Positions 1,661 through 64,000 of a stretch of DNA of 64,000 bases are shown piece by piece (position 1 is the first letter of the stretch; every line of letters begins with the position of its first letter). The DNA is taken from NCBI GenBank assembly GCA_965202585.1, contig OZ241829.1, forward strand, positions 77,810,001-77,874,000. Direction: 5' to 3'. The stretch is from Thalia democratica (Eukaryota). The notes beneath the pieces were generated by a model. The model had not been told where the DNA came from. It searched no databases and was given only the letters and a program-made list of their open reading frames with translations. A program made the position numbers and the translations under genes.

Positions 1661-2647
1661 ATGCATAAAAAAAGCAAGTCAACTCTTTTTAATGTGCAAA
1701 AAGTTTTGTAGAAAAACAGATATTGTAACCAAGAAAGCTTCAGTGTTTTGGCTTGTGGAGGAGAAGACATAAATGGAAAACTAACAAACGAAGTTTTAGA
1801 ATTGGAAATTCCTAGTTTTAAAGTAAATAAATTCCCTTCAATGGCAGAACCGCATTACTATTTACGTTTAGTTAATACCAAATCTGATATACTTGCTGTT
1901 AGTGATAGAGCAGTTTCAAATAAAATTTCAGATGAGTCAGTTGTATCTGTCGAAATTTATTCTAAAAAATCCAAAACTTGGACTCATCAATATTTAAAAA
2001 TGAAAGAACGGTCTTGTTATTGTATTACTTCATTCAAGAATAAAGTGTATTTAATTGGAGGATATAATCAAAACAAGGAAAAATATCTTAATTCGTGTTC
2101 TACTTATGATATCAATAGTAAAACATGGAATGAAATAGCAGATTTAAATGAAGCAAGAAGTTTTATGGCTTGTGCAGTTTTTGAAGGTAAAATTGTTGTC
2201 ACTGGAGGCTACATCTATACTCAAGGAAAGTTGAAATCAGTAGAAGCATATGATTATTACGAAAAAAAATGGAATTATTTACCAGATATGATCGAAGTAA
2301 AATTTAATCATGCTGCAGTTAGTATGGGTAATAAACTGTTTGTTATTGGTGGAGATAAAACTACAAGCTGTGAAGTATTTGAAAGTTATTTAAGAAAATT
2401 TACAAAAATTAATTCAGAAATTAAACTTTTTGATTGGGAAATATGCCATTTTTCTGCATTTAGCATCGGAAATAGCATTGTGGTATTTCAAAATTTCGAT
2501 TGTTATCTGACAGAAACAATCATTTACTTGTATGATACTGATAAAGAAAAATGGTTAAACATTCAGTGTGATTTTACTAAAAACATGTCATATTCAAGTT
2601 TTGTAAAGTACTACACTTTATTGTCAGAAACAATAGAAACACGTTAA
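1661..2647 (+). pseudogene. K1: Kelch-repeat beta-propeller gene with an early nonsense codon
   Basis: ATG 1661 (MHKKSKSTLFNVQKVL*) hits an in-frame TAG at 1709-1711 where paralogs read TAT GAA (YENRYC). The frame stays open from 1712 to 2647 with Kelch motifs CGG, LIGG, VTGG, VIGG, YD..W. A downstream in-frame ATG at 1841 exists. Confidence 0.85.
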
Positions 2648-2904
2648 ATAAAGTAGTAATAAAAGCTATTTTCATTTTGTTTGATATAAACTTTAACCTA
2701 CTTTCGTGACTATTTTTTTGATTTTAGCTATAGATGACTTTGTTTCTTTTATTTTTATTGAAATATTAGTTTATTTAAAAACATTAATTTTTGTTTTAAT
2801 GAAGCATATTTGATAAAAATGTTATTAGTTTATATTGACTTTTAGTTGGTTATCAGAGTAATTATTTATAATTTGTTTAATGTTAGCTTATTAGTTTAAG
2901 TTTT

Positions 2905-3970
2905 TTATAATGCTTTATTGTTACCCAGACTAGGAGCCTCACTGGTTTCCTTCGAAATTGCCTCGGTTTCAGTCTCAACAATCTCATCGGATTCCAGGTT
3001 AGCAGTAGTCTCGGAACAACTTATTTCGGTGCGCAACCGAGTTCTGGGTGCTTTCAGGACTAATGCCTTTTTTAAGGGTTTTAAGGACATAATTATATAA
3101 TTATGTAACTAAATATAATGAAAATAAATAATGTTGGTTTATTATGTACAAATACGCAATGACAGCTCACAATAAGTATAGACACTTAATGTTAACAAAT
3201 AGAAGTAAATTGTGCTCCGGATTCCCCCCTTGACGTGTCACTGGTCTCAGGTCGCTCAACTTCTGGCATTCGACGTTGGTCCGTCTCGTTTGCAGAATCT
3301 TGCTAAACGTTGCGTGGTCTGTTTTCCTTTCCTTTCCATAATCGGAGCGTGGTGATAAAATACGATATTAAATAGGCACGATGATATAAATATGTATAAA
3401 TATTACAATACAAATACAATAGTGAATAAATGCGGTGATATAAATATATATAAATATTACAATGCAAATACAATAGTGAGTATATATTATAATATGAATA
3501 TATATAAACAATACGATATAATTAAACAGTATGAACTTGTTCGTAGAAGTGTAGCTAAGGTTGACGCCCAGTCTGTGTGGGTTTACTTGCTGAGATGGAT
3601 GTTCACTTAAATCTGATTGAACGCTGTGACTCAATCGTGGAGTCCAGCTTAGAGTATTTGATGAATGAGTACTTCCAGTACTTAAATTCTCGATGCCACA
3701 TAATGCGTGGGCTTCTTCGATTAGGTGGTTGTTGAAATCTTATTGCTTAAAGATTGACGATGTTATTTCTTTTGCGGAGCAGAGTGTCGCTTCGTGCTTG
3801 TTTCGAGGTGGATTGCCCGCTTCATGCTCTGATCGGGCGTATTTATAGATTTTGAATTCTTTTTCTAGAATTTTCCATAAATCACGCGATCTCTCATTTG
3901 ATTCTCTCATTTTCCTGGACTTTGGACTGTAGATCACTTGATCTCTCATTTTATTCTCTCATTTTCCCTT
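2905..3970 (-). other. GC-richer, coding-like degenerate insert of unknown origin
   Basis: Composition is clearly more GC-rich than the flanks. Short minus-strand ORFs at 2905-3090, 3368-3634 and 3740-3949. The TAA at 3740 is GAA in the duplicate near 50151. No recognisable domain. Confidence 0.35.
3383..3515. repeat. 54-bp period minisatellite, about 2.5 units (duplicate near 49790-49925)
   Basis: GATATAAATATGTATAAATATTACAATACAAATACAATAGTG starts at 3383 and recurs at 3437; a third partial unit follows. Confidence 0.8.
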
Positions 3971-5160: not shown

Positions 5161-5584
5161 AAATTTAGATGGAACAAAATAAATAGTTTAAATGCAGCAA
5201 GAGGTAGTGCTAAATGTACAGTTTTTGAAGGTAAAATTGTTGTTACTGGGGGTGAAAATAATTGGTATGTATTAAAATCAGTAGAAGCATATGATCATCA
5301 TGAAAACAAATGGACTTGTTTACCTGATATGATTGAAGAAAGAAGTAATCATGCCGCAGTTAGTATGGGTAATAAATTGTTTATTATTGGTGGAGCATAT
5401 ACTACAAGTTGTGAAGTATTTGACAGTTTTTCAAGAAATTGGTAACAATATTTTGGTTTTGAAATTCTATTTTAGCGAAACAATAGTTTACTAATATGAT
5501 GTTGATAAAGCAAAATGGTTAAAAGTTCATTGTGATTTTACTAAAAACATGTTTGACGCCAGATATGTTAAGTACTACATCTAA
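5161..5584 (+). pseudogene. K2: 5'-truncated Kelch fragment with a 66-nt internal deletion
   Basis: Starts mid-gene (AAATTTAGATGGAACAAA, ..WNK..LNAARGSAKCTVFEGKIVVTGG). Lacks the 66 nt present at 51875-51940 in the duplicate. Ends YVKYYI-TAA at 5582-5584. Confidence 0.9.
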
Positions 5585-5854
5585 CTTTAATAAACTGTAG
5601 TAACGCGTGTTTACAATAAAAGGGAAAGCTCATCAAGTTTATTTCATTTCTTGTTTTTGTTTTGTTTAACATTTTGTTTTAAAATACTTTTTTACTCTCA
5701 TATTTGTAAAAGATTTTTTTTATTAATAACTTTCTTAGAACTTTTGTTAAAATAAAGCATATATAAAGAAAGATGTGGTATATGAAATTATCATTTTATA
5801 AAAGTGTTATAAGAGTTTTGTTGTATAACTAACAGTTCGTAATATAGTATATAA

Positions 5855-5912: not shown

Positions 5913-5920
5913 CTCAGAAA

Positions 5921-6581
5921 TTTATTCTGATAAAAATAAAATATGGACTCATAAATATTTAGAAATTGAAACAAATATTTGCTATTATGTTTGTTCATTC
6001 ATGAGTAAATTGTATTTGATCGGAGAATATATAGAAAACAGTCATAAAAGTCCTAGTTCATGTTATGCCTATGATATCAATAGTGATACATGGAACAAAG
6101 TAGCAAATTTAAATATAGCAAGAGATTGTGGTAGATGTACAGTTTGTGAAGGTAAAATTGTTGTTACTGGAGGTGTTAATAATTGGTCGACAGTAAAATC
6201 AGTAGAAGCATATGACTATCTTGAAAACTTTTATGACTTTTATCTGATATGATCGAAAAAAGAAGTCATCATGCTGCAGTTAGTATGGGTAATAAAATGT
6301 TTGTCATTGGTGGTTATAAAAATACAAATTATGAGATATTTGATAGTTTTTCAAGAAAATTTACAAAAATTGCTTCAGAAATAAAATCGTCTTATTATCA
6401 TTTCTGTTTTACTGCATTTAGCATCGGAAACAATATTGTGGTGTTTCAAAGACTTAAGAAACCCTTTCAACAAGAAACAATTGTTTACCTATACGATGTT
6501 GAAAAAGAAAAATGGCTGAATGTTAAGTGTGATTTTATTAAAAATAGGTTCGAATTAAGTTTTGTTAAATACTATGTCTAA
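5921..6581 (+). pseudogene. K3: 5'-truncated, frameshifted Kelch gene
   Basis: Begins at EIYSDKNKIWTHKY directly after the TE end. There is a frameshift near 6230-6250 (ORFs 5875-6252 and 6249-6581). It ends FVKYYV*. Confidence 0.9.
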
Positions 6582-9364: not shown

Positions 9365-9429
9365 CTTTTTTTATTTCCTCAGAGTTAAATTTAACAACTT
9401 ATTTAATCGTTTATACTTTTATTCCTAGA

Positions 9430-11420: not shown

Positions 11421-12121
11421 TTAACTTTAAAACTAATAATTTTAAATTCTGTAACTTCGTTTGTAAATTATCAACTTATGCATTTCCTACACAAATTAAA
11501 ATACTTAAGTATTCTTGTCCACAATATCTGTTTTCATATATAACTGTTGGTACTTGAATGTTGACTTATACTTTTCTTATCATTATAAATATAAACACTA
11601 ATTATTTATGTTACATCTTTTTGAATAAAATTCGCTTCAGTAAGTTTATTTTTGTATTTGATAAACTTAACTACTAATTTTTCTTATTATCAATTTTTAT
11701 ATAATAGGCAAATTATTTTTTGTTTCAGAATCAAACTTAAACTGGTTTATACTTTACAGAAAAAGTTAAACATATTTTAAAAATAAAAACTAATAGAATA
11801 TTTATATATATTTATTTATTTGCTAACAATATCACCATAAACAATTTAACAATACACACCAGACGAAATTAAGAAATAGTAACAATTTATTGAATATGTA
11901 TTAAAACAAAAATTAGAGCTTATTACCAAAAATAGTTTTGTGATATTCATTAAAACAAAAACAAAAAAGTGATTTAAAATTAAACTTAAGTATAGCAATC
12001 AAAGTAGGTTACAAGTTTTGGATAGAACTGAAACAAAATGAAATCATCTCAAAATAATTTCTTCTTTATTTTTTTAAACTTGTTAATAAATGTTCTATTA
12101 GTGCTAGTACTTTAAAAATTA

Positions 12122-13065
12122 TTAATTAAACATAGTTTTAGTAAAATCATAATGAATATTTAACCATTTATCTTTTTCAACATCATATAAGTAAACAACT
12201 GTTTTTATGAGAGGTTTTTCAAAATCTTGAAGTATAACAATGTTTCTGCCAATACTAAATGCTTGAAAATACCAATCTTTTATATTAGAAAATTTTATTT
12301 CCGAATTAGTTTTTGTAAATTTTCTCGAACAACTTTCAAATACTTCACAACTTGTAGTATATGCTCCACCAATAACCAACATTTTATTACCCATACTAAC
12401 TGAAGCATGATAAAATCTTTCTTCAGTCATGTCAGGTAAATGATTCCATTTGTTTTCATGAAAGTCATATGCTTCCACTGATTTCAATTCACCATGATTT
12501 ATGTAAAAACCTCCAGTAACAAAAATATTACCGTCAAAAACTGTGAAAACAACACAATGTCTTGCTACATTTAAATCTGCTATTTCATTCCATATATTAC
12601 TATTGATATTAAGGGTATAACACGAACTAAGTCTTTTATCACTGTTCTTAATCCAGACTCTTATTAAATATAATTTATTCATGAATGAAATAATAAAACA
12701 ACAAACCTTTCTTTCATTTGCATATATTGATGAGTCCAAGTTTTAGTTTTTTTAAAATAAATTTCAGTTGACAAAACTAAGTTATTTAAACTTTCATCAA
12801 AATTTATTCTATCACTAACAGCAAGTATATCAGATTTGTTAGCAACTAAATCTAAGCAGTAATGCGTTTTTACCATTGAAGGAAACTTTTTCACTTTAAA
12901 ACTAGGTATTTCTAATTCTAAAGTTTCGTTTGTTCTTTTTCCGTTTTTGTCTTTTCCTCCAATAATCAAAATACCGAAGCTTTCTTGGTTACAATATCTG
13001 TTTTTGTACAAAACTTTTGGTATATGAAAAGGAATTGTCTCTTAATTATCACACATCATAGACAT
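12122..13065 (-). pseudogene. K4: Kelch pseudogene
   Basis: Minus-strand ATG at 13065 (MSMMCDN*) has an early TAA. There is a frameshift near 12700 (ORFs 12679-13011 and 12122-12739). The C-terminus stops at FTKTMFN*. Confidence 0.9.
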
Positions 13066-15820: not shown

Positions 15821-16781
15821 ATGTCTCAGATGCATGAAAAAAACAAGTCAAATCCTTTTCATGTGACAAAATTATTGTATGCAAACAGATATTGTAACCA
15901 AGAAGGCTTCAGTATTTTGATTTGTGGAGGAAGACAAACATATTAAAATACAAACAAATTTTATGAGTTTATAATACGGAGTTTGAAAGTAAATAAATTT
16001 TCTTTTATAGTAGAGCCATTTTATTATTTCTACTTAGCTACTATGAAATCTGATATTATATCTTTTGGTAATATTTGAGAACTAAATCAATTTTAAGATG
16101 AGTCAAATTTATTTCTTGAAATTTATTCTGAAAAAACTTAAACTTTGACTGGTGATTGTGTTGGAAAGAAATAACGATATTGTTACTGTGTCAGTTCATT
16201 CATGAGTGAATTGTATTTAATAGTTGGGTGAGTTGGAAGCAGTGGGAAAAGTGTTAGTTGGCCTCACAGATCACATCAGAAGAAGAAGATGGAATGAAAT
16301 AGCGGATTTAAATGTAACAAGAGATTGTGCTAGATTTACAGTTTTTGAAGGTAAAATTGTTGTTACTGGAGGTAACAAAAAATGGTCTACATTAGAATCA
16401 GTAGAGGCATATGACTATCATGAAAACAAATGGACATTTGTATCTGATATGATCGAAAAAAGATGTAATCATGCTGCAGTTAGTATGGGTAACAAAATGT
16501 TTGTTATTGGTGGATACTATAATAAAAGTTGTGAAGTATTTGATAGTTTTCCAAGAAAATTCACGAAAGTTAACTCAGAAGTTTAAGTTCGCAATTTAGA
16601 AAAGCAATACTTTGATGCTTTCAGCATTGGCAATAATATTGTGATTTTTCAAGGTTTTAGAAAATTTCTGACTAAAACAGTTGTTTACTTATACGATGTT
16701 GAAAAAGAAAAATGGCTTAACAAACAATACGGTTTAACTAAAGGCTTGTTTGATTTAAGTTATGTGAAGTACTTTACCTAA
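15821..16781 (+). pseudogene. K5: Kelch pseudogene (closest paralog K13)
   Basis: MSQMHEKNKSNPFHVTKLLYANRYCNQEGF start, then several stops and frameshifts in 15960-16225. ORF fragment 16224-16586; ends YVKYFT-TAA at 16779-16781. Confidence 0.9.
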
Positions 16782-19715: not shown

Positions 19716-20681
19716 CTAATCATTAGAGGAATACTTCACATAATTTGATACAAACATGTTTATATTAAAACCACACTGATTCTTTACCCATTTTTCCTTA
19801 TCAACATCATACAAGTAAACAATTGTTTCAGTAAGAGCTTCTTGAGTATCCAGAAATACCACAATATTGTTGCCAATGCTGAATGCATCAAAGTACCATT
19901 TTTCTAAATTAGAAACTTTAATTTCTGACTTTATTTTTATGAATTTTCTCGAACAACAGTCAAATACTTCACAATTTATATTTTTCTCTCCACCAATAAC
20001 AAACAGTTTATTACCCATACTAACTGCAACATAAGAACGTCTCTTTTCAATCATATGAGGTAAATAAGTCCATTTGTTTTCATGATGATCATATGCTTCT
20101 GCTGATTTCAACGGAGACAAATTATTTTCACCTCCAGTGACAACAACTTTACCTTCAAAAATTGTACAAGCAGCACTATTTCTTCCCATATTTAAATTTG
20201 CTATATCACGCCATGCATTACTATTGATGTTGTAAGTGTAACACGAACTGACATTTTTATAATTATTTTTAACCCACCCTCCAATTATATACAATTTACT
20301 CATGAATGAACTAACACAAAAACAAGTCGGTTCTTTCATTTTCAAATTTTGATGATTCCAAGCTTTATTTTTTTTAGAATAAATTTCAACAGGTACAGCT
20401 GACAAATCAAAGTTTTTATTTTGATCTTCACAATAGCAAATAGCAAGTATATCAGATTTGATACTAACTAAATCTAAGTAGCAATGTGGTTTTACCATTG
20501 AAGGAAATTTGTTCACTTTAAAACTAGGTATTTCCAATTCTAAAACTTCGTTTGTAACTTTCCCATTTTTGTCTTCACCTCCACAAATCAAAACACTGAA
20601 GCCTTCTTGGTTACAATATCTGTTTTCATATAAAACTTTTGGTATTTGGAAAGGAATTGAGTTGTTTTTTTCAGGCATCAT
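19716..20681 (-). CDS. K6: intact Kelch-only beta-propeller protein, 321 aa
   Basis: Uninterrupted ORF with six predicted blades (ICGG, ILAIC, IIGG, VTGG, VIGG, IVVF; YD..W spacing) and no BTB/BACK. Confidence 0.9.
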   Translation of the reverse strand: MMPEKNNSIPFQIPKVLYENRYCNQEGFSVLICGGEDKNGKVTNEVLELEIPSFKVNKFPSMVKPHCYLDLVSIKSDILAICYCEDQNKNFDLSAVPVEIYSKKNKAWNHQNLKMKEPTCFCVSSFMSKLYIIGGWVKNNYKNVSSCYTYNINSNAWRDIANLNMGRNSAACTIFEGKVVVTGGENNLSPLKSAEAYDHHENKWTYLPHMIEKRRSYVAVSMGNKLFVIGGEKNINCEVFDCCSRKFIKIKSEIKVSNLEKWYFDAFSIGNNIVVFLDTQEALTETIVYLYDVDKEKWVKNQCGFNINMFVSNYVKYSSND

Positions 20682-22982: not shown

Positions 22983-23927
22983 ATGCATGAAGAAAACAAT
23001 TCAGTTCCTTTTCAAGGACCAATAGTTATGTATGAAAACAGATATTGTAATCAAGAAGGTTTCAGTATTTTGATTTGTGGAGGAGAAGACAAAAATGGGA
23101 TAGTTACAAACGAAGTTTTAGAATTAGAAATACCTAGTTTTAAAGTAAACAAATTTCCTTCAATGGCAGAACCGCATTATTATTTAGATTTAGTTAATAC
23201 CAAATCTGATATACTTGCTGTTAGTGATAGAGTAAATTCGAATAAAACTTCTGATGATTCAGTTGTATCTGTTGAAATTTATTCTAAAAAAAACGAAACT
23301 TGGACTCATCAATATGTGAAAATTAAAGAACGGTCTTGTTATTATATTACTTCATTCAAGAGTAAAATGTATTTAATTGGAGGATATAATACAAACAAAG
23401 AGAAATATCTTAATTCGTGTTCTACTTATGATATCAATAGTAAAACATGGAATGAAATAGCAGATTTAAATGAAGCAAGAGGTTTCACGACTTGTGCAGT
23501 TTTTGAAGGTAAAATTGTTGTTACTGGAGGTGAAATTGATTTGTGTTCATTGAAATCAGTAGAAGCATATGATTATCATGACAACAAATGGAAGTATTTA
23601 CCTGATATGATTGAAACAAGAATTGATCATGCTGCAGTTAGTATGGGTAATAAACTGTTTGTTATTGGTGGATACAAAAGTACAAGTTGTGAAGTATTTG
23701 AAAGTTTTTCAAGAGAGTTTACAAAAATTAATTCAGAAATTAAAGATTTTGGTTTAAATATATGGTACTATTATGCTTTCAGCATTGGAAATAATATTGT
23801 AGTGTTTCAAAATTTTCAAAATCTCTGTACAGAAACAGTTGTTTACTTATACAATGTTGACAAAGAAAAATGGTCAAACTTTCAGTGTGATTTTAATAAA
23901 AATAACTTTGTAAAGTACTATACCTAA
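22983..23927 (+). CDS. K7: intact Kelch-only beta-propeller protein, 314 aa
   Basis: Uninterrupted ORF MHEENN...FVKYYT with the Kelch GG/Y/W motifs; in-frame 4-codon deletion near the C-terminus relative to K1. Confidence 0.9.
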   Translation: MHEENNSVPFQGPIVMYENRYCNQEGFSILICGGEDKNGIVTNEVLELEIPSFKVNKFPSMAEPHYYLDLVNTKSDILAVSDRVNSNKTSDDSVVSVEIYSKKNETWTHQYVKIKERSCYYITSFKSKMYLIGGYNTNKEKYLNSCSTYDINSKTWNEIADLNEARGFTTCAVFEGKIVVTGGEIDLCSLKSVEAYDYHDNKWKYLPDMIETRIDHAAVSMGNKLFVIGGYKSTSCEVFESFSREFTKINSEIKDFGLNIWYYYAFSIGNNIVVFQNFQNLCTETVVYLYNVDKEKWSNFQCDFNKNNFVKYYT

Positions 23928-25553: not shown

Positions 25554-25820
25554 NNNNNNNNNNNNNNNNNNNNNNNNNNNNNNNNNNNNNNNNNNNNNNN
25601 NNNNNNNNNNNNNNNNNNNNNNNNNNNNNNNNNNNNNNNNNNNNNNNNNNNNNNNNNNNNNNNNNNNNNNNNNNNNNNNNNNNNNNNNNNNNNNNNNNNN
25701 NNNNNNNNNNNNNNNNNNNNNNNNNNNNNNNNNNNNNNNNNNNNNNNNNNNNNNNNNNNNNNNNNNNNNNNNNNNNNNNNNNNNNNNNNNNNNNNNNNNN
25801 NNNNNNNNNNNNNNNNNNNN
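25554..25820. other. Assembly gap (267 N)
   Basis: Run of N characters. Confidence 1.
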
Positions 25821-26338
25821 NATTTGTGTTGTTCTTTGATTTTTAAACTAAACTAAAATTTAAATTTTGCCACAAATTCAAACCTAGTAATATAAGTTAA
25901 TTTGTTATTTTTTTAGGTAAAAAATTCGTTTTAACTATAAGTTTTTTTATATAAAGCATTTAAGCGGGATTTCAAAATTTCATAGTAATTAAAAGCGCAA
26001 GATTGTTATATTTTTAATAACTACGTCACAATTAAAATAAGCTACATTAAATTCAATTCAATTTTAAGCTCACTTTATTAATTATATTTTTGCTTAAGCA
26101 ATGTTTACTCTGTAAATTAACTAGAAGTAAAAAAAGGCTACATACAGCTTTTATTATTATTGTTTTTATATCGATTTTAAAACTTAGCTAAAATTTAAAC
26201 TTCACCTAAAACTCAGTCTTAATATTAAAATTTAATTTGTTAAGTTTCTTAAGTAAAAATTTTGAGTAAAAGTTTGGTTTTATTCAAATTTAATTGTTTA
26301 AATGCTATTTTTCATGACTGTCACATATCTTTTTAAGA

Positions 26339-29639: not shown

Positions 29640-31450
29640 GTATAATATTTGTTTAAGCAAACTGCTGTAATTAAATGTTAATAACATTATTTTTTTGTTT
29701 TCAAAATTTACACCAAACATTAATAAACTTTTAAGCCAAGCATAAACTTTAAGCTTAAAATTTTCAATAACGGTATATTAAAAATCTAGCACTAGTGACT
29801 TAACCAACTATTTTTTAATATATTTTAAGTACGATATTTTCTTTGTTAGCTCAAATTGATTACTAGTTACCAATAGAAGATTTTTACAACTTACAACATC
29901 TTTTCTATATATCCCTGTAGAAAAAGCTATACACTGTTGATGAAAAACTTATTTTTATAAAAAAAAAGTTTTATTTTTGTTAACTTGTAATAGTATATTG
30001 AAGGTTAGTATGGAATTTTCGACTGTCTCAAGTTTAAACTATTTAAGAAATTAGTGCGTACGGATCTTATAATTGATAATAAAAAACAGGTTAACAACAG
30101 AAGTTTAATAAAGCTTTAAAAGTTTATTTTTAAAAAAAGTATGTTGACTAAAAACTATTTAGCAATATACATTTTTTTGATTCTTCTCTAAACAACAAGT
30201 TAATTAATTGGTTTCATATATAAATACTTCGTTAATTATATCTAATAATTTATAAACTTGAAAAGTACTTGATTATTGACTAGTTTAGATTAAAGTTTTC
30301 AAGGATTGTCACTATTTCATTCTATTAACTTATAAAATTATTTGTCTACAATTGAATATGTTGACATCTTGACGAAAATATATTTTGGTTCAAAGAGCGT
30401 TAACTTAGCTCGATTAGCATTTTTTGATTTATTTATTAGTTCGTTTTTTTTTAAGGGATCTCTTGTTCAAATAATGATAACTTTTGAGACCGTTTTCGTC
30501 CTTATAAGGACTCATCAGTCAGTCACAACCGAAACTTGTGATCTGATGATCGAATTGGCATGATCAAAACTTCCGTTAAACTAAAGCTTGTCTCACGGCA
30601 AAAGTAAGTCCAAGCTTCTGCTCTGCAGACTTTCGCCGATGTTTTTGTTGACCAAATTTATTTATAATTTAGTAGATCTTTTTACACATATACTTAAAAT
30701 GTAAACTATTAAATCTATTTCTTAAGTTATTAAGTCATACTCCGTATTAAACAACAATACAAAGTTTCCGTTTCATTAATAACTTTCAATTTTTATAAAA
30801 AAGCAAAAATTCAAATTAGATGATTGGTTCAATTAATGTTTAATACATTTATTTGTTATATTAGTAAACAAACATCATTCTATTGTAATTTAATCGAAAC
30901 ATATAAAAAATACTCAGATGCTATTGTTAAACTTTTTAATATTTTTTCACTTCATATCTTCAAAAACGTTACTGTAGAAAAGTTTAAAACATAGCTTATC
31001 ACTAAAAACCACAATAAATATCTTTATGATAGTTTTTCATTAAAGAATTTAACAAAAGTAGAAAAACAATCATCGCAAAAACATTTTTTAAACTAACAAT
31101 AAAACAAGCAATTAAAAAACTTAGTTAACTAAAGAAATAAAAACATTTTATACACAAAATCAACTTGTTTATATTGTTTCGGTTAGTTTAGAAAAATCTA
31201 TTAGCCTATAATGTCACTAGGTCATATTAATCTATAACTTTAGTAATCTTTTTAGTTAAAATGCTTATAATAGTAGACAAAGTATAACATGAAGCACGAA
31301 TGATATGATTTAAAATCTAACAAATAATTAAGTTTTACAAGTAATTAAGTTTAAGGACACGTTTTAACTAATATCTTGAGTTGAAAAAATAATTTGCAAT
31401 CTTATATTGATAGGTTAAAATGACTCAGGTAATAAATAACAAAATGATGC
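29640..31450. repeat. Inverted copy of 9430-11420
   Basis: Reverse-complement matches as listed for 9430-11420; boundaries are approximate. Confidence 0.8.
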
Positions 31451-32573
31451 AGATTTTTAATTATAAGTTTAATAAGGTATCCGCAACAAAGTAGTAAACA
31501 ATTTGAAATATCATTTAAAGCGTTTTGACAAGTGTGAATTTAAATAGTATCAACAATCCAACAACTAAAGATTTTCAATTTACCACACTTTAAAAATTTC
31601 TTTTTTTCTATTAAATCAGCAAAATGTTTTTTTTTACTTATAACAATTCATTTTTCTTATAAAACTCCTTATAACTTCTAAATAGATTTTTTTTGTGGCA
31701 AACCTATTAGAATAAGTCTACTTATTTAGTTATTTCTAGCTAAAAAAGTATTTCTTTTTCATAACTACTATTTAGTCAAACAAAAAACTAGATTATATTT
31801 TCAATGAGTATTATTTGTATAGTATATTTAACTTTTATTATACTTAAAGACACACTGTACTTTTTTTTTCAACATATTTATTTTTTGCTTAAACTCAAAA
31901 GTATATATAACAGAAATATTTTTTTAAATGTTTAAAAATATAAACTATTACAAAATTTCAATTAAAATAAACGCTTATTGAAAATTACTTAATATTAACT
32001 AACTGTTTGTTTTAAATTGCATATTTCTAAAATTATTGAATAATTATAAGAACAAGTAAAAGAGTTTACTGTTTTAACAATATATTTTACTAATTATTAA
32101 AAGATTTAAAATTTGTTTAAGATGTTTTTTTGTAATATCTTAAGTTATAATAAATCTAATTATTTATATTTGTAAAACTGCAAAATTTAAAGTAATTTAT
32201 AGCTAATATTAATAAAATGAACAGACAACAGAAAATTTTCAATGAGTATCATTTGTTTAGTGTATTTTACTTTTATTTTTCTTGAAGATAATCAGTACTG
32301 TTTTTCATAGTGTATTTATTTTCTGTATTATATTTAAGGAATATAAAGAAGAACATACAATTTTTTAAAATTTTACCAACTGTTTGCGAAGTTAAAATTT
32401 ATAAGAATCTAATCAAAAATATTAAATAATATTTATTAACAGATAATTTCGACTTGTATTTTTCTACACGAATTGCGTTTTAAGTGATACATTATATCGT
32501 TTTGTTTTAAATGTGTCTAGTTTCATTTTAATTTCTGTTTTTAGACAAAATTTTTTTTTCTGGCAAAGTGTCT

Positions 32574-36501: not shown

Positions 36502-36662
36502 CCTGCAAAAGTGACGCCGTGCAAAAGTGTCCCTTTATGCTAAAGTTTTGCTCGTGCAAAAGAGTCGCCGCGTGCAAAAGTGTCCCCTCGTGCAAAAGTG
36601 ACGCTCGTGCAAAAGTGTCCCTTCGTGCAAAAGTGACACTGGTGCAAAAGTGACCCGTTCCC
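36502..36662 (+). repeat. GTGCAAAAGTG minisatellite element, copy 2
   Basis: About 9 units of GTGCAAAAGTG(A/T)C... with a 16-19 nt period, ending GACCCGTTCCC. Confidence 0.85.
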
Positions 36663-37743: not shown

Positions 37744-38712
37744 TTAGGAGTAATACTTCGCAAAACTTGAATAAAACCTGTTTTTAGTAAAATCACACTG
37801 AACGCTTAACAATTTTTCTTTTTAAACATCGTATAAGTAAATGTATGTTTCTTCGAAGCTTCCTTGAAAATTTTGGAACACTACAATATTATTTCCGATG
37901 TCTAATGCAAAAAAATTGCATAATGGTTTAAGAGAATTTTTAATTTCTGAAAAATGTTTGTGAACTTTCTCGAACAACTGTTAAATTTTTCACAACTTGT
38001 AGTATATTTTCAACCGATAACATACATTTTTTGACCAATACTAACTGCAGCATGATTACATCTTACTTTAATCATATCAAGTAAATAAATCCATTTGTTT
38101 TCATGATAATCATATGTTTCTACTGATTTCAATTCTCCATGATCATTGTTACAACCACCAGTATCAACAATTTTTCCTTCAAAACCTGAACAAGCCGTAA
38201 AACCTTTTTCAACATATAAATTTGCTAATTTATTTCATACATTACTATTGATATCATAAGTAGAACACGAACTAAGATATTTATTATTGTTTTGATTAAA
38301 TCTTCCAATTAAATACAGTTTATTCATGAATGAAGTAATACAATAACAAATCCTTTCTTTTATTTTCACATATTGATGAGTCCAAGTTTTGTTTTTTTTT
38401 AGAATATTTTTCAACATATTCAACTACCTCATCAAAAATGTTACTTGATTTTGCTTTATTACTAACAGCAAGTATATCAGATTTGATATTAACTAAACGT
38501 AAATAATAATGTGATTCTGCCATTGAAGGAAATTTATTCACTTTAAAACTAGGTATTTCTAATTCTAAAACTTCGTTTGTAAATTTTTCATTTTTGTCTT
38601 CTCCTCCACAAGCCAAAATACTGAAGCCTTCTTGGTTACAATATCTGTTTTCATACAAAACTTTCGGTACTTGAAAAGGAACAGACTTGCTTTTTTCATG
38701 CATCATAGACAT
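37744..38712 (-). pseudogene. K9: Kelch pseudogene (inverted paralog of K7)
   Basis: ORFs 38320-38712 and 38235-38423 show a frameshift in an A-run near 38395; further stops downstream. It ends FAKYYS-TAA at 37744. Its upstream AG acceptor is mutated to AC. Confidence 0.9.
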
Positions 38713-42762: not shown

Positions 42763-43719
42763 ATGCATGAAAAAAACAAGTCGATTCCTTTCCAAGTACC
42801 AAAGGTTTTGTATGAAAACAGATATTGTAACCAAGAAGGCTTCAGTGTTTTGATTTGTGGAGGTGAAGACAAAAATGGGAAAGTTACAAACGAAGTTTTA
42901 GAATTGGAAATACCTAGTTTTAAAGTGAATAAATTTCCTTCAATGGTAAAACCACATTGCTACTTAGATTTAGTTATTATCAAATCTGATATACTTGCTA
43001 TTTGCTATTGTGAAGATCAAAATAACAACTTTGATTTGTCAGCTGTACCTGTTGAAATATATTCTGAAAAAACTAAAGCTTGGAATCATCAAAATTTGAA
43101 AATAAAAGAAGCGACTTGTTTTTGTGTTAGTTCATTCATGAATAAATTGTATATAATTGGAGGGTGGGATAAAAATAATTATAAAAATGTCAATTTGTGT
43201 TACACTTACAACATCAATAGTGATACATGGAATAAAATAGCGAATTTAAATATGGCAAGAGATTGTGCTGCTTGTACAGTTTTTGAAGGTAAACTTGTTG
43301 TTACTGGAGGTGAAAATGATTTGTCTCCGTTGAAATCAGCAGAAGCATATGATCATCATGAAAACAAATGGACTTATTTATCTGATATGATTGAAAAGAG
43401 ACGTTCTCATGTTGCAGCTAGTATGGGTAATAAAATGTTTGTTATTGGTGGAGAGCAAAATATAAATTGTGAAGTATTTGACTGTTGTTCGAGAAAGTTC
43501 ATAAAAATAAATTCAGAAATTAAAGTATCTGGTTTAGAAAGATGGTACTTTAATGCATTCAACATTGGCAACAATATTGTGGTATTTCTGGATACTCAAG
43601 AAGCTCTTACTGAAACAATTGTTTACTTGTATAATGTTGATAATGAAAAATGGGTAAAGAATCAGTGTGGTTTTAATATAAACATGATTGTATCAAATTA
43701 TGTGAAGTACTACATCTAA
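42763..43719 (+). CDS. K10: intact Kelch-only beta-propeller protein, 318 aa (inverted paralog of K6)
   Basis: Uninterrupted ORF, closely similar to K6 (AICYCEDQN, SPLKSAEAYDHHENKW). Confidence 0.9.
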   Translation: MHEKNKSIPFQVPKVLYENRYCNQEGFSVLICGGEDKNGKVTNEVLELEIPSFKVNKFPSMVKPHCYLDLVIIKSDILAICYCEDQNNNFDLSAVPVEIYSEKTKAWNHQNLKIKEATCFCVSSFMNKLYIIGGWDKNNYKNVNLCYTYNINSDTWNKIANLNMARDCAACTVFEGKLVVTGGENDLSPLKSAEAYDHHENKWTYLSDMIEKRRSHVAASMGNKMFVIGGEQNINCEVFDCCSRKFIKINSEIKVSGLERWYFNAFNIGNNIVVFLDTQEALTETIVYLYNVDNEKWVKNQCGFNINMIVSNYVKYYI

Positions 43720-48074: not shown

Positions 48075-49055
48075 ATGCATAAAAAAAGCAAGTCAACTCT
48101 TTTTAATGTGCCAAAAGTTTTGTATGAAAACAGATATTGTAACCATGAAAGCTTCAGTGTTTTGGCTTGTGGAGGAGAAGACAAAAATGGAAAACTAACA
48201 AACAAAGTTTTAGAATTGGAAATTCCTAGTTTTAAAGTAAATTCCCTTCAATGGCAGAACCGCATTACTATTTACGTTTAGTTAATACCAAATCTGATAT
48301 ACTTGCTGTTAGTGATAGAGCAGTTTCAAATAAAATTTCAGATGAGTCAGTTGTATCTGTTGAAATTTATTCTAAAAAATCCAAAACTTGGACTCATCAA
48401 TATTTGAAAATGAAAGAACGGTCTTGTTATTGTATTACTTCATTCAAGAATAAAGTGTGTTTAATTGGAGGATATAATCAAAACAAGGAGAAATATCTTA
48501 ATTCGTGTTCTACTTATGATATCAATAGTAAAACATGGAATGAAATAGCAGATTTAAATGAAGCAAGAGGTTTTACGGCTTGTGCAGTTTTTGAAGGTAA
48601 AATTGTTGTTACTGGTGGCTACATCTATACTCAAGGAAAGTTGAAATCAGTAGAAGCATATGATTTTACGAAAAAAATGGAATTATTTACCTGATATGAT
48701 CGAAGTAAAATTTAATCATGCTGCAGTTAGTATGGGTAATAAACTGTTTGTTATTGGAGGAGATAAAACTACAAGCTGTGAAGTATTTGAAAGTTATTTA
48801 AGAAAGTTTACAAAAATTAATTCAGAAATTAAACTTTTTGATTGGGAAATATGCCATTTTTCTGCATTTAGCATCGGAAATAGCATTGTGGTATTTCAAA
48901 ATTTCGAAAGTTATCTGACAGAAACAATCATTTACTTGTATGATATTGATAAAGAAAAATGGTTAAACATTCAGTGTGATTTTACTAAAAACATGTCATA
49001 TTCAAGTTTTGTAAAGTACTACACTTTATTGTCAGAAACTATAGAAACACGTTAA
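48075..49055 (+). pseudogene. K11: Kelch pseudogene, near-identical to K1, with two frameshifts
   Basis: 4-nt deletion near 48240 (GTAAATTCCC vs GTAAATAAATTCCC) and net 2-nt loss near 48665-48678, giving ORF fragments 48075-48281, 48251-48694 and 48660-49055. Confidence 0.9.
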
Positions 49056-49309
49056 ATAAAGTAGTAATAAAAGCTATTTTCATTTTGTTTCATATAAACT
49101 TTAACCTACTTTCGTGACTATTTTTTTGATTTTAGCTTTAGATGACTTTGTTTCTTTTATTTTTTTTGAAATATTAGTTTATTTAAAAACATTAGTTTTT
49201 GTTTTAATAACGCATATTTAATAAAAATGTTATTAGTTTATATTGACTTATAGTTGGTTATCAGAGTAATTATTTATAATTTGTTTAATGTTAGCTTATC
49301 AGATTAATT

Positions 49310-51592: not shown

Positions 51593-52084
51593 AAATTTAG
51601 ATGGAACAAAATAAATAGTTTAAATGCAGCAAGAGGTAGTGCTCAATGTACAGTTTTTGAAGGTGAAATTGTTGTTACTGGGGGCTACTACTATCCTCAA
51701 GGAGAATTGAAATCAGTAGAGGCATATGACTATTATGAAAACAAACGGACAATTGTATCTGGTATGGTCGAAAAAAGATGTAATTATGCTGCAGTTAGTA
51801 TGGGTAATAAAATGTTTGTTATTGGTGGAGAACATACAACAAATTGTGAAGTATTTGATAGTTTTTCAACAATTTTCACAAATATTTGTTTAGAAATTTA
51901 TCCTGATGAAGAAAAATGTTTGTTCGGTGCATTTAGCATTGGTAACAATATTTTGGTTTTTGAAATTCTATTTTAGCAAACAAAAGTTTACTAATATGAT
52001 GTTGATAAAGCAAAATGGCTAAAAGTTCATTGTGATTTTACTAAAAACAAATTTGACGCCAGATATGTTAAGTATTACATCTAA
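51593..52084 (+). pseudogene. K12: 5'-truncated Kelch fragment (duplicate of K2; K8-like)
   Basis: Same truncation junction as K2 (AAGTCTGC|AAATTTAGATGGAAC). Carries GGYYYPQGELKSVEAY as in K8 and ends TAA at 52082-52084. The 3' flank to about 53225 is homologous to the K8 flank 33540-34625. Confidence 0.9.
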
Positions 52085-57535: not shown

Positions 57536-58497
57536 ATGCATGAAAAAAACAAGTCAATTCCTTTTCATGTGCCAAAATATTTGTATGAAAACAGATATTG
57601 TAACCAAGAAGGCTTCAGTATTTTGATTTGTGGAGGAAAAGACAAAAATAAAAAAATACAAACGAAGCTATAGAGTTGGAAATACCTAGTATGAATGTTA
57701 ATGAATTCCCTTCAATGGTAGAACTGCATTATTATTTCTACTTAGCTACTATTAAATCTGATATTACAGCTTTTGTGTTAGTCCAGAACTAAATTGCTTT
57801 TTAAATGAGTTCAATTTATTTCTTGAAATTTATTCTGGAAAAACAAAAACTTGGACTAATCACATTGTTGGAAAGAAAAAACGGTATTGCTATTGTGTCA
57901 GTTCATTCATGAGTGAATTGTATTTAATAGGAGGGTGGGTCGGAAGCAGTGGGCAAAGTGTTAGTTGGTCTCACAGATACGACATCAGAAGAAGAATATG
58001 GAATGAAATATCAGATTTAAATGTAGCAAGAGATATTGCTAAATGTAAAGTTTTTGAAGGTAAAATTGTTGTTACAGGAAGTAACAAAAGTTGGTCTACA
58101 TTAAAAACAGTAGAGGTATATGACTATCATGAAAACAAATGGACATTTGTATCTGATATGATCGAAAAAAGATGTAATCATGCTGCAGTTAGTATGGGTA
58201 AAAAAATGTTTGTTATTGGTGGATACTATAATACAAGCTGCGAAGTATTTGATAGTTTTTCAAGAAAGTTCACAAAAGTTTACTCAGAAATTAAAGTTCG
58301 CAATTTAGAAAAGCAGTAATTTAATGCTTTCAGCATTGGCAATAATATTGTGATATTTCAAAGTTTTAGAAAACCTTACATTTCTTACAGAAATAGTTGT
58401 TTACTTAAACGATGTTGAAAAACAAAAATGGCTAAACAAACAATATGGTTTTACTAAATACTTTTTTAATTTAAGTTATGTGAAGTACTTTACCTAA
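57536..58497 (+). pseudogene. K13: Kelch pseudogene (paralog of K5)
   Basis: ATG 57536 (MHEKNKSIPFHVPKYLYENRYC); frameshift and stops near 57780-57805; stop at 58317-58319; ends YVKYFT-TAA at 58495-58497. Confidence 0.9.
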
Positions 58498-60877: not shown

Positions 60878-61829
60878 CTAGGTGTTGTACTAAACAAATC
60901 TTGATTGAAAAATATATTCAGTAAAATCTCTGTGAATGTACAACCACTTTTCTTTTTTAACATCGTATAAGTAAATAACACTTACTGCGTAAGTTTCGTG
61001 AAAGACAACAATATTTTTGCCAATACAAACTGCATTGAAATTCACTTTTTGGAAATCTGGTAAAATATCTGAAGTAATTTTTGTGAAAATTCTGGAACTA
61101 CTATCAAATACTTCACAACTTGTAGTAAAATTTCCACCAATAACAAACATTTTATCACCCATGCTAACTGCAGCATGATAAAATCTTTCTTCAATCATAT
61201 CAGGTAAAAAAATCCATTTATTTTCATGATGATCATATGCTTCTACTGATTTCAATGCTCCATTATCATATTTGTAGCTACCAATAACAACAATTTTACC
61301 TTAAAAAACTGTACATTCAGCACAATCTCTTGCTACATTTAGATGTGCTTTTTCATTCCATATATTACTATTGATATCATAAGTATAACATGAACCATGA
61401 GTTTTATCACTGCTATCTATATAACCACTAATCAAATACAGTTTATTCATAAACGAAGTAACACAATAACAAGACTTATCTTTCATTTCCACATACTGAT
61501 GATTCCATTTTTTAGTTTTTTTTAGAGTAAGTTTCAACAGATAAAAATGAATCATCTAAACTTTCATTAAATTTTGTTGTGTTCCCAATAGCAATTACAT
61601 CAGATTTAATAGTAATTAAGTCTAAGTAGTAATACGGTTCTACCATTGAAGGAAATTTGTTCACTTTAAAACTAGGTATTTTTACTTCTAAAACTTCGTT
61701 TTTCATATATCCATTTTCGTCTGTTCCTCCACAAATCAAAATACTGAAGCCTTCTTGGCTACAATATCTGTTTTCATACAAAACTTTTGGTACATGAAAA
61801 GGATTTGAGTTGCTTTCCTCATGCATCAT
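60878..61829 (-). pseudogene. K14: Kelch pseudogene
   Basis: Three ORF fragments (61512-61829, 61301-61555, 60890-61255) indicate two frameshifts; a premature TAG at 60890 replaces the conserved K of FVKY. Confidence 0.9.
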
Positions 61830-63923
61830 GGATATTTCTCAAAAAATTAAATTAGTCTAAAAACAAGAAAATAATTAAGGTGGAAAATTGTAAAAAACAA
61901 AATGTGAAAATTTTCAGTAGAAAATAAAGACAATTGAAAAACGAATAATTAGTGGAAACAATCAGTAAAGAATATTTAAAATTAAGATAACAATATAGTA
62001 AGTACAAGTTATATTTAGCTTCTAAATGACTTACTCTCTATCTTCTCTTTATGAATTATTTGACTAAAATTTGGTTAACAATTGTTGTGGTTTAACCTTG
62101 TTGTGTTTTAACTAAAAAGTTTAAATCGCTCTCGGAATAGTTTAAAACTTTCATAAAAACAATTTAAAAATATAACTCTTGATTTAAGAGTGTACTAAAG
62201 GAAATATGCATAATAAATAATACTGAATGAAAGTATAAATTAAACTATTTATTTAACTAGTTAGTAAATATTAGTTACTCCTAGTTCAAAAGCTTTAAAA
62301 ACTAAAATTTAATAGCTGTTAAAACCAATTAATCCATTTCGAAATTGTAAACGAACTTATATCAGTAATAGCACATAGTGTATTAAACCAAAAAGAACTT
62401 TATTGAAAAACATCAATCATTAAATTTTAAAATTAGGTATCTTTAAATTATTGCTATGTTTCATTATTAAAAATATTCTAGTTAATTTTCAGTAAAAGCA
62501 AATAACTTGAACAAAGTTTAACTAAAAACTAGTCAATTATCAGGTAATTTTAAATTGTTGTAAATGTTAGATATAAGTTTAGCTACTTAGGTATGAACCC
62601 AATTAATTAACTTCATATTTGGGGAAGAAAAAAAGACTTTATATATTGCTAAACAATTTTTCATTAGCTTATTTTTTTAAAATAAACTATTTTAGTTATA
62701 TTATACTTCATTTGTTAATCTGTTTTATATTATCAATTTTTAATCGGTATACTATAAATTTCTAAAACAGTATAAACTTGAGACAGTCCAAAACTTTATA
62801 TTAACCTACAATGTATTGATATAAATTACTAAAGTTGAACTTTCTTCTTTCGATTTTCTAAACAAATAAAACATTTATTTTCTAGTACAGCCACCCTTTT
62901 AAGATAATATTTAGAGTTTAAAAAAATAAAATAGCAGCTTATTTTTATCATAAGTAAACCAACAAGCTTAATTAAAGAAATGTGTTTTTTAATTGATTAT
63001 TGTAATATTTTTGAATGCGTGTTAAAGTAATTGTAAATAAGTTGTAAGCCTAAAATCATTGCTGTATTGTTAAAAACAGTGACTTTATTTTCAATTTATC
63101 ACTTTTAACTAAAAAAAAAAACTTATTTCAATTTGTGTAAATGATTTAGATATTTGATGATAAAATTAAACCTTTTTTTGTTTAAAATAGTTAAAACTTA
63201 AAAGACTTCTATATTAAAAGATTTTATGATAGTAAACTAACTTTGTAATAACTGTATAGCAACGTCTGTCATCCTTAGTCATTTTAACTACTGTAAACTT
63301 AATTGAATGATTTCATTTACTCAAAAGAAATACTTTAAAGTATAAAACCTAAAAAATACATGATTATTGATTTTTAATGAAATCAAATAAATAATTATTT
63401 GTTTTTATAAGTTTTACTCCTTTAATTACTTAAATCCTTTCATACATACTAACTATTATTTTTTAATATATAATACTGATAATAGTCTTTAAATTTTAAA
63501 TTTTAAGGTTAAAAGTTAGGACTAAACTTAACTTACTGTTTAGTCAACTAAACAATTTAACTTGTTTTTATAGTGAATGTTATGTATTTAAAGTTTTTTC
63601 TGCTTCGTTAATAAGTAATTCAAGTAAACAGTACTTTTTTTTTGAAGTCTTCAAAATTTCTATGAATTTCTAAAATTTTTAAAGGTAATTTTTTAAGTTC
63701 AAACAAAAAGTTTGTTAATACTAATATACTAACTCACAAGTTTAATCAAATATAATAAAATATATAACTTTCCCTAACTATATTTTTAATTTTAGGCTTG
63801 CGTATTACTTAATAATTACTTATTTGAAAAATAAGATAGACATATTTTTTTACTGAAATTTATTTAAAATTTATCATATTTTGTTTAAGCCTCTGTTTTT
63901 AGACTTACTTTTTCTATTGCAAA

Positions 63924-64000
63924 ATGTCTATGATGTGTAAAATTAATAAGTCAATTCCTTTTCAAGTACCAGCAGTTTTGTACGAAAACAGATATTGTAA
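63924..64000 (+). CDS. K15: 5' end of another Kelch gene (runs off the window; closest to K4)
   Basis: MSMMCKINKSIPFQVPAVLYENRYC is open to the window end and preceded by TTTTTAG|ACT. Its intactness cannot be judged. Confidence 0.75.
   Translation, partial: MSMMCKINKSIPFQVPAVLYENRYC

What the first reader, a model, noticed from the sequence alone, without database searches (positions are those of the whole stretch)
1661..64000. Dense cluster of 15 BTB-less Kelch propeller genes: possible variable-recognition or decoy family
Seen: 15 copies in 64 kb, each about 315-320 codons when complete, starting at a short linker (M..N.S.PF..P..LYENRYCNQE) followed by six Kelch blades. No BTB/BACK or F-box sequence was found anywhere in the window. 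Known: animal KLHL proteins are BTB-BACK-Kelch CUL3 substrate adaptors, and the propeller is the substrate-binding module. Inference: these are stand-alone propellers that may act as decoys or sensors, with birth-and-death turnover like that of immune or allorecognition families.
Basis: partly seen in the sequence, partly recalled or inferred. Interest (0 to 1): 0.8.

Follow-up and report, generated by a model that had tools for sequence, protein, structure and literature searches.

The report
Giant array of stand-alone Kelch genes
The window is a slice of a two-megabase tandem array of intronless genes in a marine animal (probably a pelagic tunicate); each gene encodes only the target-binding propeller of a ubiquitin-ligase adaptor, the fold is conserved while the binding-face loops vary, and whether the genes are expressed could not be tested.

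Summary
Five are intact ORFs of 314-322 codons, one has a single stop, six are frameshifted and four are fragments. The N gap lies in intergenic DNA and touches no copy.

The genes are stand-alone. No BTB, BACK or F-box was found. The start codon is conserved in 62 of 62 intact paralogs. A conserved splice-acceptor-like TTTAG sits 27-32 nt upstream, in no fixed reading frame, so no upstream coding exon can join there.

The cluster is far larger than reported. At least 115 near-full-length copies lie across 2 Mb of this chromosome, and the family's N-terminal motif occurs about 930 times genome-wide. The family descends from this genome's much-expanded BACK-Kelch genes by loss of the 5' part.

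The fold is under purifying selection (omega 0.4-0.5). The substrate-face loops evolve near neutrally (0.9-1.0), with a few candidate positively selected sites. Birth-and-death turnover is supported. Decoy, sensor or allorecognition roles are untested, because no RNA data were available.

The scan flagged similar Kelch clusters elsewhere in this genome.

The parts
1661..2647 (+). K1: full-length Kelch-only copy, pseudogene with one premature TAG at 1709-1711
5170..5581 (+). K2: 5'-truncated, frameshifted fragment (residues about 156-318)
5917..6581 (+). K3: 5'-truncated, frameshifted fragment (residues about 98-318)
11485..11559 (-). K4f: 25-residue N-terminal scrap
12107..13041 (-). K5: full-length copy with a frameshift (pseudogene)
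15830..16775 (+). K6: full-length copy with a frameshift (pseudogene)
19716..20681 (-). K7: intact ORF, 321 aa; the family-conserved ATG is at 20678 and the acceptor-like TTTAG at 20712-20708, 29 nt upstream
22983..23927 (+). K8: intact ORF, 314 aa; acceptor-like TTTTTAG at 22948-22954, 28 nt upstream of the ATG
25554..25821 (.). Assembly gap (268 N) in intergenic DNA; no Kelch copy abuts it
29739..29942 (-). Possible very decayed Kelch C-terminal relic (E=0.004, 31% identity)
32568..33536 (+). K9: intact ORF; the family-conserved ATG is at 32577 and the acceptor-like TTTTTAG at 32538-32544, 32 nt upstream
37750..38712 (-). K10: full-length copy with two frameshifts; the acceptor AG is mutated to AC (pseudogene)
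42763..43719 (+). K11: intact ORF, 318 aa, the reference copy that was modelled; acceptor-like TTTAG at 42730-42734, 28 nt upstream
48075..49055 (+). K12: full-length copy with two frameshifts; lies in the segmental duplicate (46416-53233) of 1-5854
51602..52081 (+). K13: 5'-truncated fragment, duplicate of K2
57536..58491 (+). K14: full-length copy with three frameshifts (pseudogene)
60887..61829 (-). K15: full-length copy, frameshifted (pseudogene)
63933..64000 (+). K16: start of an intact copy that continues about 892 bases beyond the window (locus L024); acceptor-like TTTTTAG at 63896-63902

Best explanation
SHOWN. The window is part of a tandem array of at least 2 Mb (contig C5, about 77.25-79.24 Mb) of intronless genes of about 318 codons. 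Each encodes only a KLHL-type six-bladed Kelch propeller.

The family arose from this genome's expanded BACK-Kelch genes by loss of everything 5' of the BACK-Kelch linker. The linker motif Y-x-N-R-Y-C-x-Q is shared by both families. The array grows by DNA-level segmental duplication and inversion, and it loses copies to frameshifts, stops and truncation (birth and death).

Selection keeps the reading frames open and the propeller scaffold intact. The B-C and D-A loops, which form the ligand pocket in KEAP1 and other KLHL proteins, change at close to the neutral rate.

INFERRED. Each gene is its own transcription unit. Its 5' UTR begins at a conserved acceptor about 30 nt before the ATG, most likely a spliced-leader trans-splice site. 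The products are cytosolic peptide-binding modules with many different specificities. They lack BTB (dimerisation and CUL3 docking) and BACK, so they cannot act as classical CUL3 adaptors. They most likely act by simple binding, that is by sequestering or masking targets, or by competing with the BACK- or BTB-bearing Kelch paralogs.
For: Copies and architecture.

Scale: 126 matches, 115 of them on C5 between 77.255 and 79.242 Mb, and about 80 without stops. The motif occurs 933 times against 2 for the control. Other clusters on C1, C2 and C4 are also Kelch-only.

No BTB, BACK or F-box.

Untranslated leader: the start Met is conserved in 62 of 62 paralogs. A TTTAG lies 27-32 nt upstream, at distances mod 3 of 20/16/23. 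The same layout occurs on a Tara Oceans contig.

Fold: pLDDT 85.5 with six blades. Foldseek gives KLHL17, KLHL12, KLHL20 and KEAP1 at TM 0.75-0.83. A PDB profile search gives KLHL12 at 3.7e-45.

Origin: a 480-aa BACK-Kelch gene of the same genome aligns from residue 185 to residue 15 of the Kelch-only protein, through the shared NRYC-x-Q linker, at 31% identity.

Duplication mode: close paralogs share 4.4-5.5 kb or more of contiguous homology.

Selection: omega is 0.40 in strands and 0.87-0.88 in the B-C and D-A loops. In 23 independent closest pairs, scaffold pN/pS is 0.50 (below neutral, p=3e-15) and loop pN/pS is 0.97; the difference has Fisher p=6e-6. 107 of 318 sites are under negative selection. 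A neutral ORF would be expected to collect about 16 stops over the family's depth. The blade-4 B-C loop has 34 different hexapeptides among 62 genes, against 6 variants of the A-B turn.

The role of the B-C and D-A loops as the KEAP1 pocket is taken from PMC12314335.
Against: No transcript evidence exists. Two searches found no RNA run that holds these genes, and the runs laid on the region were genomic DNA. Expression, the 5' end and trans-splicing are therefore unproven.

Loop omega is not above 1, so relaxed constraint explains the loop variability as well as diversifying selection does.

Most copies in the window are pseudogenes (11 of 16), and scaffold omega of 0.4-0.5 is high for an essential protein.

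No binding partner is known. The mapping of variable sites to the binding face rests on strand order in the model, not on measured coordinates.
Confidence: 0.6

Rival explanations
1. Genomic drift. The array is mainly a by-product of unequal crossing-over in a duplication-prone region. Copies are weakly constrained and largely redundant, and the loops vary only because surface loops tolerate change. There is no organised recognition repertoire.
For: 11 of 16 loci in the window are broken. Family-wide omega is about 0.6 and about 0.78 for the youngest pairs. Loop omega is 0.9-1.0, not above 1. No RNA evidence exists. Plant F-box families have been read this way (PMC3030570).
Against: About 80 long ORFs persist across a divergence at which a neutral ORF would carry about 16 stops, with P of about 1e-7. 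107 sites are under significant purifying selection. The start codon and the upstream acceptor are conserved. Subfamilies are shared with another planktonic organism's contigs. Seven sites pass a 10% false-discovery threshold for beta > alpha, mostly in binding-face loops.
Confidence: 0.25
2. Split E3 adaptor. The propellers still deliver targets to a ubiquitin ligase, but through a separately encoded partner (a BTB/BACK, RING or other protein). That partner would dock on the highly conserved N-terminal peptide (P-F-x-V-P-K-V-L-Y-E-N-R-Y-C-N-Q) or on the conserved face of the propeller.
For: The N-terminal linker is the most conserved stretch of the protein, with C22 and Q24 invariant and L16, Y17, N19, R20 and Y21 at least 90% conserved. 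It is modelled with low confidence, as expected for a docking peptide. The A-B and C-D loops on the opposite face are as conserved as the strands. First-stage notes report RING/coiled-coil/Kelch and CARD/Kelch genes in this genome (unchecked).
Against: The same linker is present in BACK-Kelch genes, so it may simply be a structural part of the Kelch domain. No partner was identified. No BTB, BACK or F-box lies in the array.
Confidence: 0.1
3. The ORFs are the last coding exons of longer BTB-BACK-Kelch (or other) genes whose upstream exons lie elsewhere in the intergenic DNA.
For: A conserved polypyrimidine-AG sits about 30 nt upstream of every ORF.
Against: The distance from the AG to the ATG is spread over all three frames, even among near-identical paralogs (28, 29, 30 and 32 nt). 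Ten genes have an in-frame stop in between. The ATG is conserved in 62 of 62. tblastn with this genome's own BTB and BACK sequences finds nothing in the window (best E 0.11). Genome-wide BTB, BACK and F-box hits do not fall in the array.
Confidence: 0.03
4. The copies are cargo of a transposon, a retroposed (processed) gene family, or viral DNA.
For: The genes are intronless. The young subfamily is scattered over 2 Mb. Homology between two copies in the window ends about 0.5 kb either side of the gene.
Against: Other members of the same subfamily share 4.4-5.5 kb of contiguous flank, including the promoter side, which retrocopies would lack. No spliced-leader-Kelch junctions exist in the genome. 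No transposase- or polymerase-like ORF was found in the window. Composition matches the host.
Confidence: 0.02

Closest known systems
KLHL (BTB-BACK-Kelch) CUL3 substrate adaptors such as KLHL12, KLHL17, KLHL20, KLHL3 and KEAP1
   Same: The six-bladed Kelch propeller is the same. These are the best sequence and fold matches (KLHL12 3.7e-45; TM 0.75-0.83). Blade 1 is closed by the C-terminal strand in the same way. Variability concentrates in the B-C and D-A loops that form the substrate pocket.
   Different: The BTB and BACK domains are absent, so the elements needed for dimerisation and CUL3 binding are missing. The genes are intronless and are present in hundreds of tandem copies, not as a few dispersed genes.
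This genome's own BACK-Kelch genes (for example L062, 480 aa; about 2640 first-look BACK candidates)
   Same: They share the linker Y-x-NRYC-x-Q, the blade motifs and C-terminal features, and they are single-ORF genes in large tandem clusters.
   Different: Identity is only about 28-31%. The Kelch-only genes start about 15 residues before the linker and lack BACK altogether.
Expanded substrate-receptor families: F-box and MATH-BTB genes of nematodes and plants, and plant F-box-Kelch genes
   Same: Hundreds of tandem, fast-turnover paralogs with many pseudogenes. Variation is focused on the target-binding domain. They have been read either as pathogen-driven or as genomic drift (PMC8120010 and PMC3030570).
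   Different: Those families keep the ligase-docking domain (F-box or BTB). Here only the recognition module is left.
Kelch-only proteins of animals (KLHDC family; the KLHDC2/3/10 CRL2 receptors)
   Same: A stand-alone Kelch propeller of roughly 320-400 residues.
   Different: From general knowledge, KLHDC2/3/10 carry C-terminal BC and Cul2 boxes. These proteins end within 0-10 residues of the last strand. Their nearest relatives are of KLHL type, not KLHDC type.

Membership tests
Kelch-repeat beta-propeller superfamily (Pfam Kelch_1, PF01344) | Kelch repeats above the curated cut-off that fold into a closed propeller | tested here: met
   Kelch_1 scores 76-96 bits against a cut-off of 20.1 in all four intact ORFs. 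The model has six blades at pLDDT 85.5. Foldseek probability is 1.00 to KLHL Kelch domains.
KLHL / BTB-BACK-Kelch CUL3 adaptors | N-terminal BTB/POZ domain | tested here: not met
   No BTB hit in the proteins. No BTB hit of the genome lies in C5 77-79.3 Mb. tblastn with the genome's own BTB sequences finds nothing in the window. The ORFs start about 25 residues before blade 1.
KLHL / BTB-BACK-Kelch CUL3 adaptors | BACK domain between BTB and Kelch | tested here: not met
   No BACK hit in the proteins. None of the 150 scored BACK hits lies in the array. tblastn with five BACK regions of this genome gives a best E of 0.11.
KLHL / BTB-BACK-Kelch CUL3 adaptors | Binding to CUL3 and substrate ubiquitylation | not testable with these tools
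   This needs biochemistry.
F-box-Kelch (SCF substrate receptors) | F-box motif N-terminal to the Kelch repeats | tested here: not met
   All 65 F-box candidates in the genome were scored and none lies in the array. The proteins give no F-box hit.
KLHDC-type CRL2 receptors | C-terminal BC box / Cul2 box after the propeller | tested here: not met
   The proteins end 0-10 residues after the last strand, at residues 312-317 of 318. The defining feature itself is taken from general knowledge.
Birth-and-death multigene family | Tandem duplicates, intact genes mixed with pseudogenes, and subfamilies shared across species with lineage-specific bursts | tested here: met
   5 intact and 11 broken loci in the window. 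Segmental duplicates are present. Marine-metagenome homologs interleave with subfamilies of this genome, and a 21-member burst is specific to this genome.
Diversified (immune-type) recognition repertoires | Positive selection on ligand-contacting residues | tested here: inconclusive
   Loop omega is 0.87-0.97, against 0.40-0.50 for the scaffold. A home-made site test finds 12 sites at p<0.05, of which 7 pass a 10% false-discovery threshold. Gene conversion was not controlled for.
Diversified (immune-type) recognition repertoires | Expression, and induction by infection or non-self contact | not testable with these tools
   No RNA run holds the genes. The laid runs were DNA.

The most novel reading that the evidence does not exclude
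The roughly 900 Kelch-only genes, together with the thousands of BACK-Kelch genes and the reported RING- and CARD-Kelch genes of this pelagic tunicate, form an intracellular diversified recognition system. In it the Kelch propeller plays the part that LRR, B30.2/SPRY or WD40 domains play in other animals' innate immunity. The stand-alone propellers would act as free binders or regulators of foreign (viral or parasite) proteins or of the ligase-linked paralogs.
Probability: 0.15. Interest if true: 0.8.

Novelty: new variant of a known kind. Interest (0 to 1): 0.55.

Why it matters
Large, fast-evolving families of ubiquitin-ligase substrate receptors are known from plants and nematodes, and those families always keep their ligase-docking domain. 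Here hundreds of genes, kept open by selection, retain only the recognition module. The closest sister group of vertebrates therefore offers a natural test of what a free Kelch propeller does: competitor, sequestering agent, or partner of a separately encoded ligase subunit.

The full-text searches run here turned up no description of a Kelch expansion of this size in tunicates. The array is also a clean system for studying tandem-array dynamics, because it combines segmental duplication, inversion and pseudogene decay.

Tried and rejected
RNA evidence. Two run searches (5.9 kb with two intact genes, and the reference gene alone) returned no RNA holder. The one read-laying run showed genomic contigs that cover intergenic DNA as well. 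Expression could not be tested, and this is not evidence of silence.

Upstream coding exon. Rejected on acceptor-to-ATG distances spread over three frames and on in-frame stops.

BTB, BACK and F-box remnants. None was found.

Transposon or retrocopy origin. Rejected because paralogs share 4.4-5.5 kb of flanks.

Spliced-leader-Kelch retrocopies as indirect proof of trans-splicing. A pattern joining the leader's 3' end to the 5' UTR start hit only leader-hammerhead elements and no Kelch gene.

Other features in the window. Pfam on ten non-Kelch ORFs gave nothing above cut-off. The bacterial promoter and terminator scan was uninformative.

Site test. A first run timed out, and a second was invalid because of a degenerate optimiser start. 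Only one search is used.

Array limits.

Literature. Searches for Kelch expansions in tunicates, salps or thaliaceans found nothing relevant.

Not used. Complex prediction was not run because no specific partner is claimed.


Full report
WHAT IS IN THE WINDOW

The window is very AT-rich, at about 24% G+C. Its only long ORFs are Kelch genes. tblastn with the intact copy at 42763-43716 finds 16 loci on both strands.

- Four are intact ORFs of 314-322 codons: 19716-20681(-), 22983-23927(+), 32568-33536(+) and 42763-43719(+).
- A fifth starts at 63933, runs past the window end, and is intact in the flanking DNA.
- One copy has a single TAG at 1709-1711.
- Six full-length copies are frameshifted.
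- Three are 5'-truncated and one is a 25-residue scrap.
- A further, very decayed relic may lie at 29739-29942.

The assembly gap (25554-25821) lies in intergenic DNA. It is 1.6 kb after one stop codon and 6.7 kb before the next start, and no Kelch-coding sequence lies beside it. It interrupts no frame. It only means the copy number is a lower bound.

ARCHITECTURE

All intact ORFs hit Kelch_1 strongly and no other domain type. An alignment of 77 family members gave an AlphaFold model with pLDDT 85.5. The model has 24 strands arranged as six four-stranded blades, with the C-terminal strand closing blade 1.

Foldseek's best natural matches are the Kelch domains of KLHL17, KLHL12, KLHL20, KEAP1 and Plasmodium K13, at TM 0.75-0.83. 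A profile search of PDB sequences puts KLHL12 (3.7e-45), KLHL3, IVNS1ABP, KEAP1 and KLHL2 on top among natural proteins.

ARE THEY REALLY STAND-ALONE?

I extracted 58 further intact paralogs from the genome. Four lines of evidence bear on this.

- The same Met, 18-19 residues before the NRYC motif, starts the ORF in all 62 genes. The upstream reading frame closes after 0-55 unrelated codons.
- A polypyrimidine-AG (TTTAG) lies 27-32 nt upstream of the ATG in most of them. The distance falls in frames 0, 1 and 2 in 20, 16 and 23 genes. It differs by single bases even among near-identical paralogs, and ten genes have an in-frame stop in between. This segment is therefore untranslated, and no upstream coding exon can be joined here in a conserved frame.
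- The same layout is present on a marine-metagenome contig that encodes a 60%-identical homolog.
- BTB, BACK and F-box models hit many places in the genome but none in the array. tblastn with this genome's own BTB and BACK regions finds nothing in the window (best E 0.11).

The conserved acceptor fits a spliced-leader trans-splice site. The Ciona-type 16-nt leader occurs in this genome (earlier scan notes). This remains an inference, because no transcript data could be obtained.

SCALE AND ORIGIN

The window is C5:77,810,001-77,874,000 of an 802-Mb assembly. The protein search scored only the best 125 of 5,705 first-look candidates. Of those, 115 lie on C5 between 77.255 and 79.242 Mb, and about 80 have no stop.

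The DNA motif for YENRYCNQE occurs 933 times, against 2 for the reversed control. Further clusters lie on C1 (18.7-19.4 Mb), C2 (62.6-63.8 Mb) and C4 (96.6-97.9 Mb). Sampled genes there are also Kelch-only, with different short N-termini.

The genome also has a very large set of single-ORF BACK-Kelch genes without BTB, with 2,640 first-look BACK candidates. One of them (480 aa) aligns from its residue 185, through I-Y-Y-T-N-R-Y-C-K-Q, to residue 15 of the Kelch-only protein, and then on to the C-terminus at 31% identity. The Kelch-only family is thus an old 5'-truncated derivative of BACK-Kelch genes, cut at the BACK/Kelch linker.

HOW THE ARRAY EVOLVES

Self-comparison shows repeated blocks around every gene and one 6-kb segmental duplicate, 1-5854 against 46416-53233. 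Members of the youngest subfamily, which is at least 87% identical in protein and is scattered over 2 Mb, share 4.4-5.5 kb or more of contiguous homology with the reference copy, including upstream DNA. Duplication is therefore at the DNA level, and these are not retroposed or transposon-borne units. Mixed orientation and truncated homology point to inversions.

In a tree, Kelch-only homologs from Tara Oceans marine metagenomes (PRJEB4352) interleave with subfamilies of this genome. One subfamily has burst to at least 21 members here. This is birth-and-death evolution.

SELECTION

- Pairwise omega is 0.5-0.8.
- Parsimony counts on the tree give omega 0.40 for strands, 0.42 for A-B turns, 0.54 for C-D turns, 0.88 for B-C loops and 0.87 for D-A loops.
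- In 23 phylogenetically independent closest pairs, scaffold pN/pS is 0.50, below neutral at p=3e-15. B-C plus D-A loop pN/pS is 0.97. The difference has Fisher p=6e-6.
- A home-made fixed-effects site test finds 107 of 318 sites under negative selection. Twelve sites have beta > alpha at p<0.05, and seven of them pass a 10% false-discovery threshold: 5, 6, 66, 84, 186, 232 and 301. Gene conversion among paralogs was not controlled for, so this is only suggestive.
- With 6% of point mutations creating stops, a neutral 954-nt ORF would be expected to collect about 16 stops over the family's root-to-tip divergence (P of about 1e-7 of staying open). Dozens of copies are nevertheless open. The genes therefore encode proteins that matter, or mattered until very recently.

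The B-C and D-A loops form the ligand pocket of KEAP1 (PMC12314335). In this family the blade-4 B-C loop has 34 different hexapeptides in 62 genes, while the A-B turn on the other face has 6 variants. Hypervariable sites are enriched in polar residues.

INTERPRETATION

The best-supported picture is a large repertoire of cytosolic Kelch propellers with a conserved fold and a diversified binding face, and no domain that could recruit CUL3. The N-terminus is polar with no hydrophobic stretch (by inspection). The most likely mode of action is plain binding: sequestration, masking, or competition with ligase-linked Kelch paralogs.

The main rival is non-adaptive genomic drift, supported by loop omega not exceeding 1, many pseudogenes and no expression data. 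A second rival is that the very conserved N-terminal linker docks a separately encoded ligase subunit.

A role as a surface allorecognition receptor is unlikely for proteins without a signal peptide. Immune or allorecognition involvement in general is untested.

THE ORGANISM

I could not identify the organism directly. Four observations fit the earlier scan agents' reading of a pelagic tunicate, which I adopt only as probable: the AT-rich 802-Mb genome, the Ciona-type spliced leader, homologs found only in open-ocean metagenomes, and dense intronless gene families.

The scan has flagged comparable Kelch clusters on other DNA of this genome (s1-311155, s1-311146, s1-301098; s1-311164).

NOVELTY

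The domain and the kind of evolution are known. A family of hundreds of KLHL-derived propellers stripped of BTB and BACK, kept open by selection, was not found in the literature searched. I rate it a new variant of a known kind, of moderate to good interest, limited by the lack of any expression or ligand data.

Noticed in passing
window 27505-29010 (- strand): A run of five consecutive minus-strand open frames of 67-94 codons, in slightly G+C-richer DNA. They have no Pfam match above cut-off (a weak IFT20-like hit, E 0.006). This may be an unannotated or decayed non-Kelch gene inside the array.
   Followed up: partly
window 2900-3960 and its duplicate 49295-50260: The G+C-richest block of the window (about 32%) has overlapping open frames on both strands and a 54-bp tandem repeat (3378-3508 and 49785-49915). 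It has no Pfam or Rfam match and may be a fragment of a repeat element carried along in the 6-kb segmental duplication.
   Followed up: partly
window 36504-36656: A G+C-rich tandem repeat (18/35/53-bp periods, unit CGTGCAAAAGTGTCCCCT) that is unlike the surrounding AT-rich DNA.
   Followed up: no
window 23491-23531: When genomic contigs were laid on the region, dozens matched only this 40-base piece of a conserved blade. They diverged on both sides into AT-rich sequence that ends in ...TTCAG on the left. Either other Kelch paralogs have introns here, or a short Kelch-derived repeat exists.
   Followed up: no
G000:C2:62617821-62617895, 62837013-62837087, 63421160-63421234: Three identical weak F-box-like hits (E 0.0099, 77-codon open frames) lie inside the C2 cluster of Kelch-only genes. 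A small F-box-like ORF may be co-amplified with Kelch genes there.
   Followed up: no
L087-L091 (for example G000:C2:40110910, C4:24262846): The full Ciona-type 16-nt spliced leader is directly followed by a hammerhead-core-like sequence (CTGACGAG...GAAAC) in dispersed copies. A related motif occurs hundreds of times (549 pattern hits against 65 for the control).
   Followed up: partly
   Followed up: partly
G000:C1:114.5-116.3 Mb, C1:89.0-89.4 Mb, C4:78.5-79.3 Mb: Very large tandem clusters of single-ORF BACK-Kelch genes of about 470-500 codons that lack a recognisable BTB domain (2,640 first-look BACK candidates genome-wide).
   Followed up: partly
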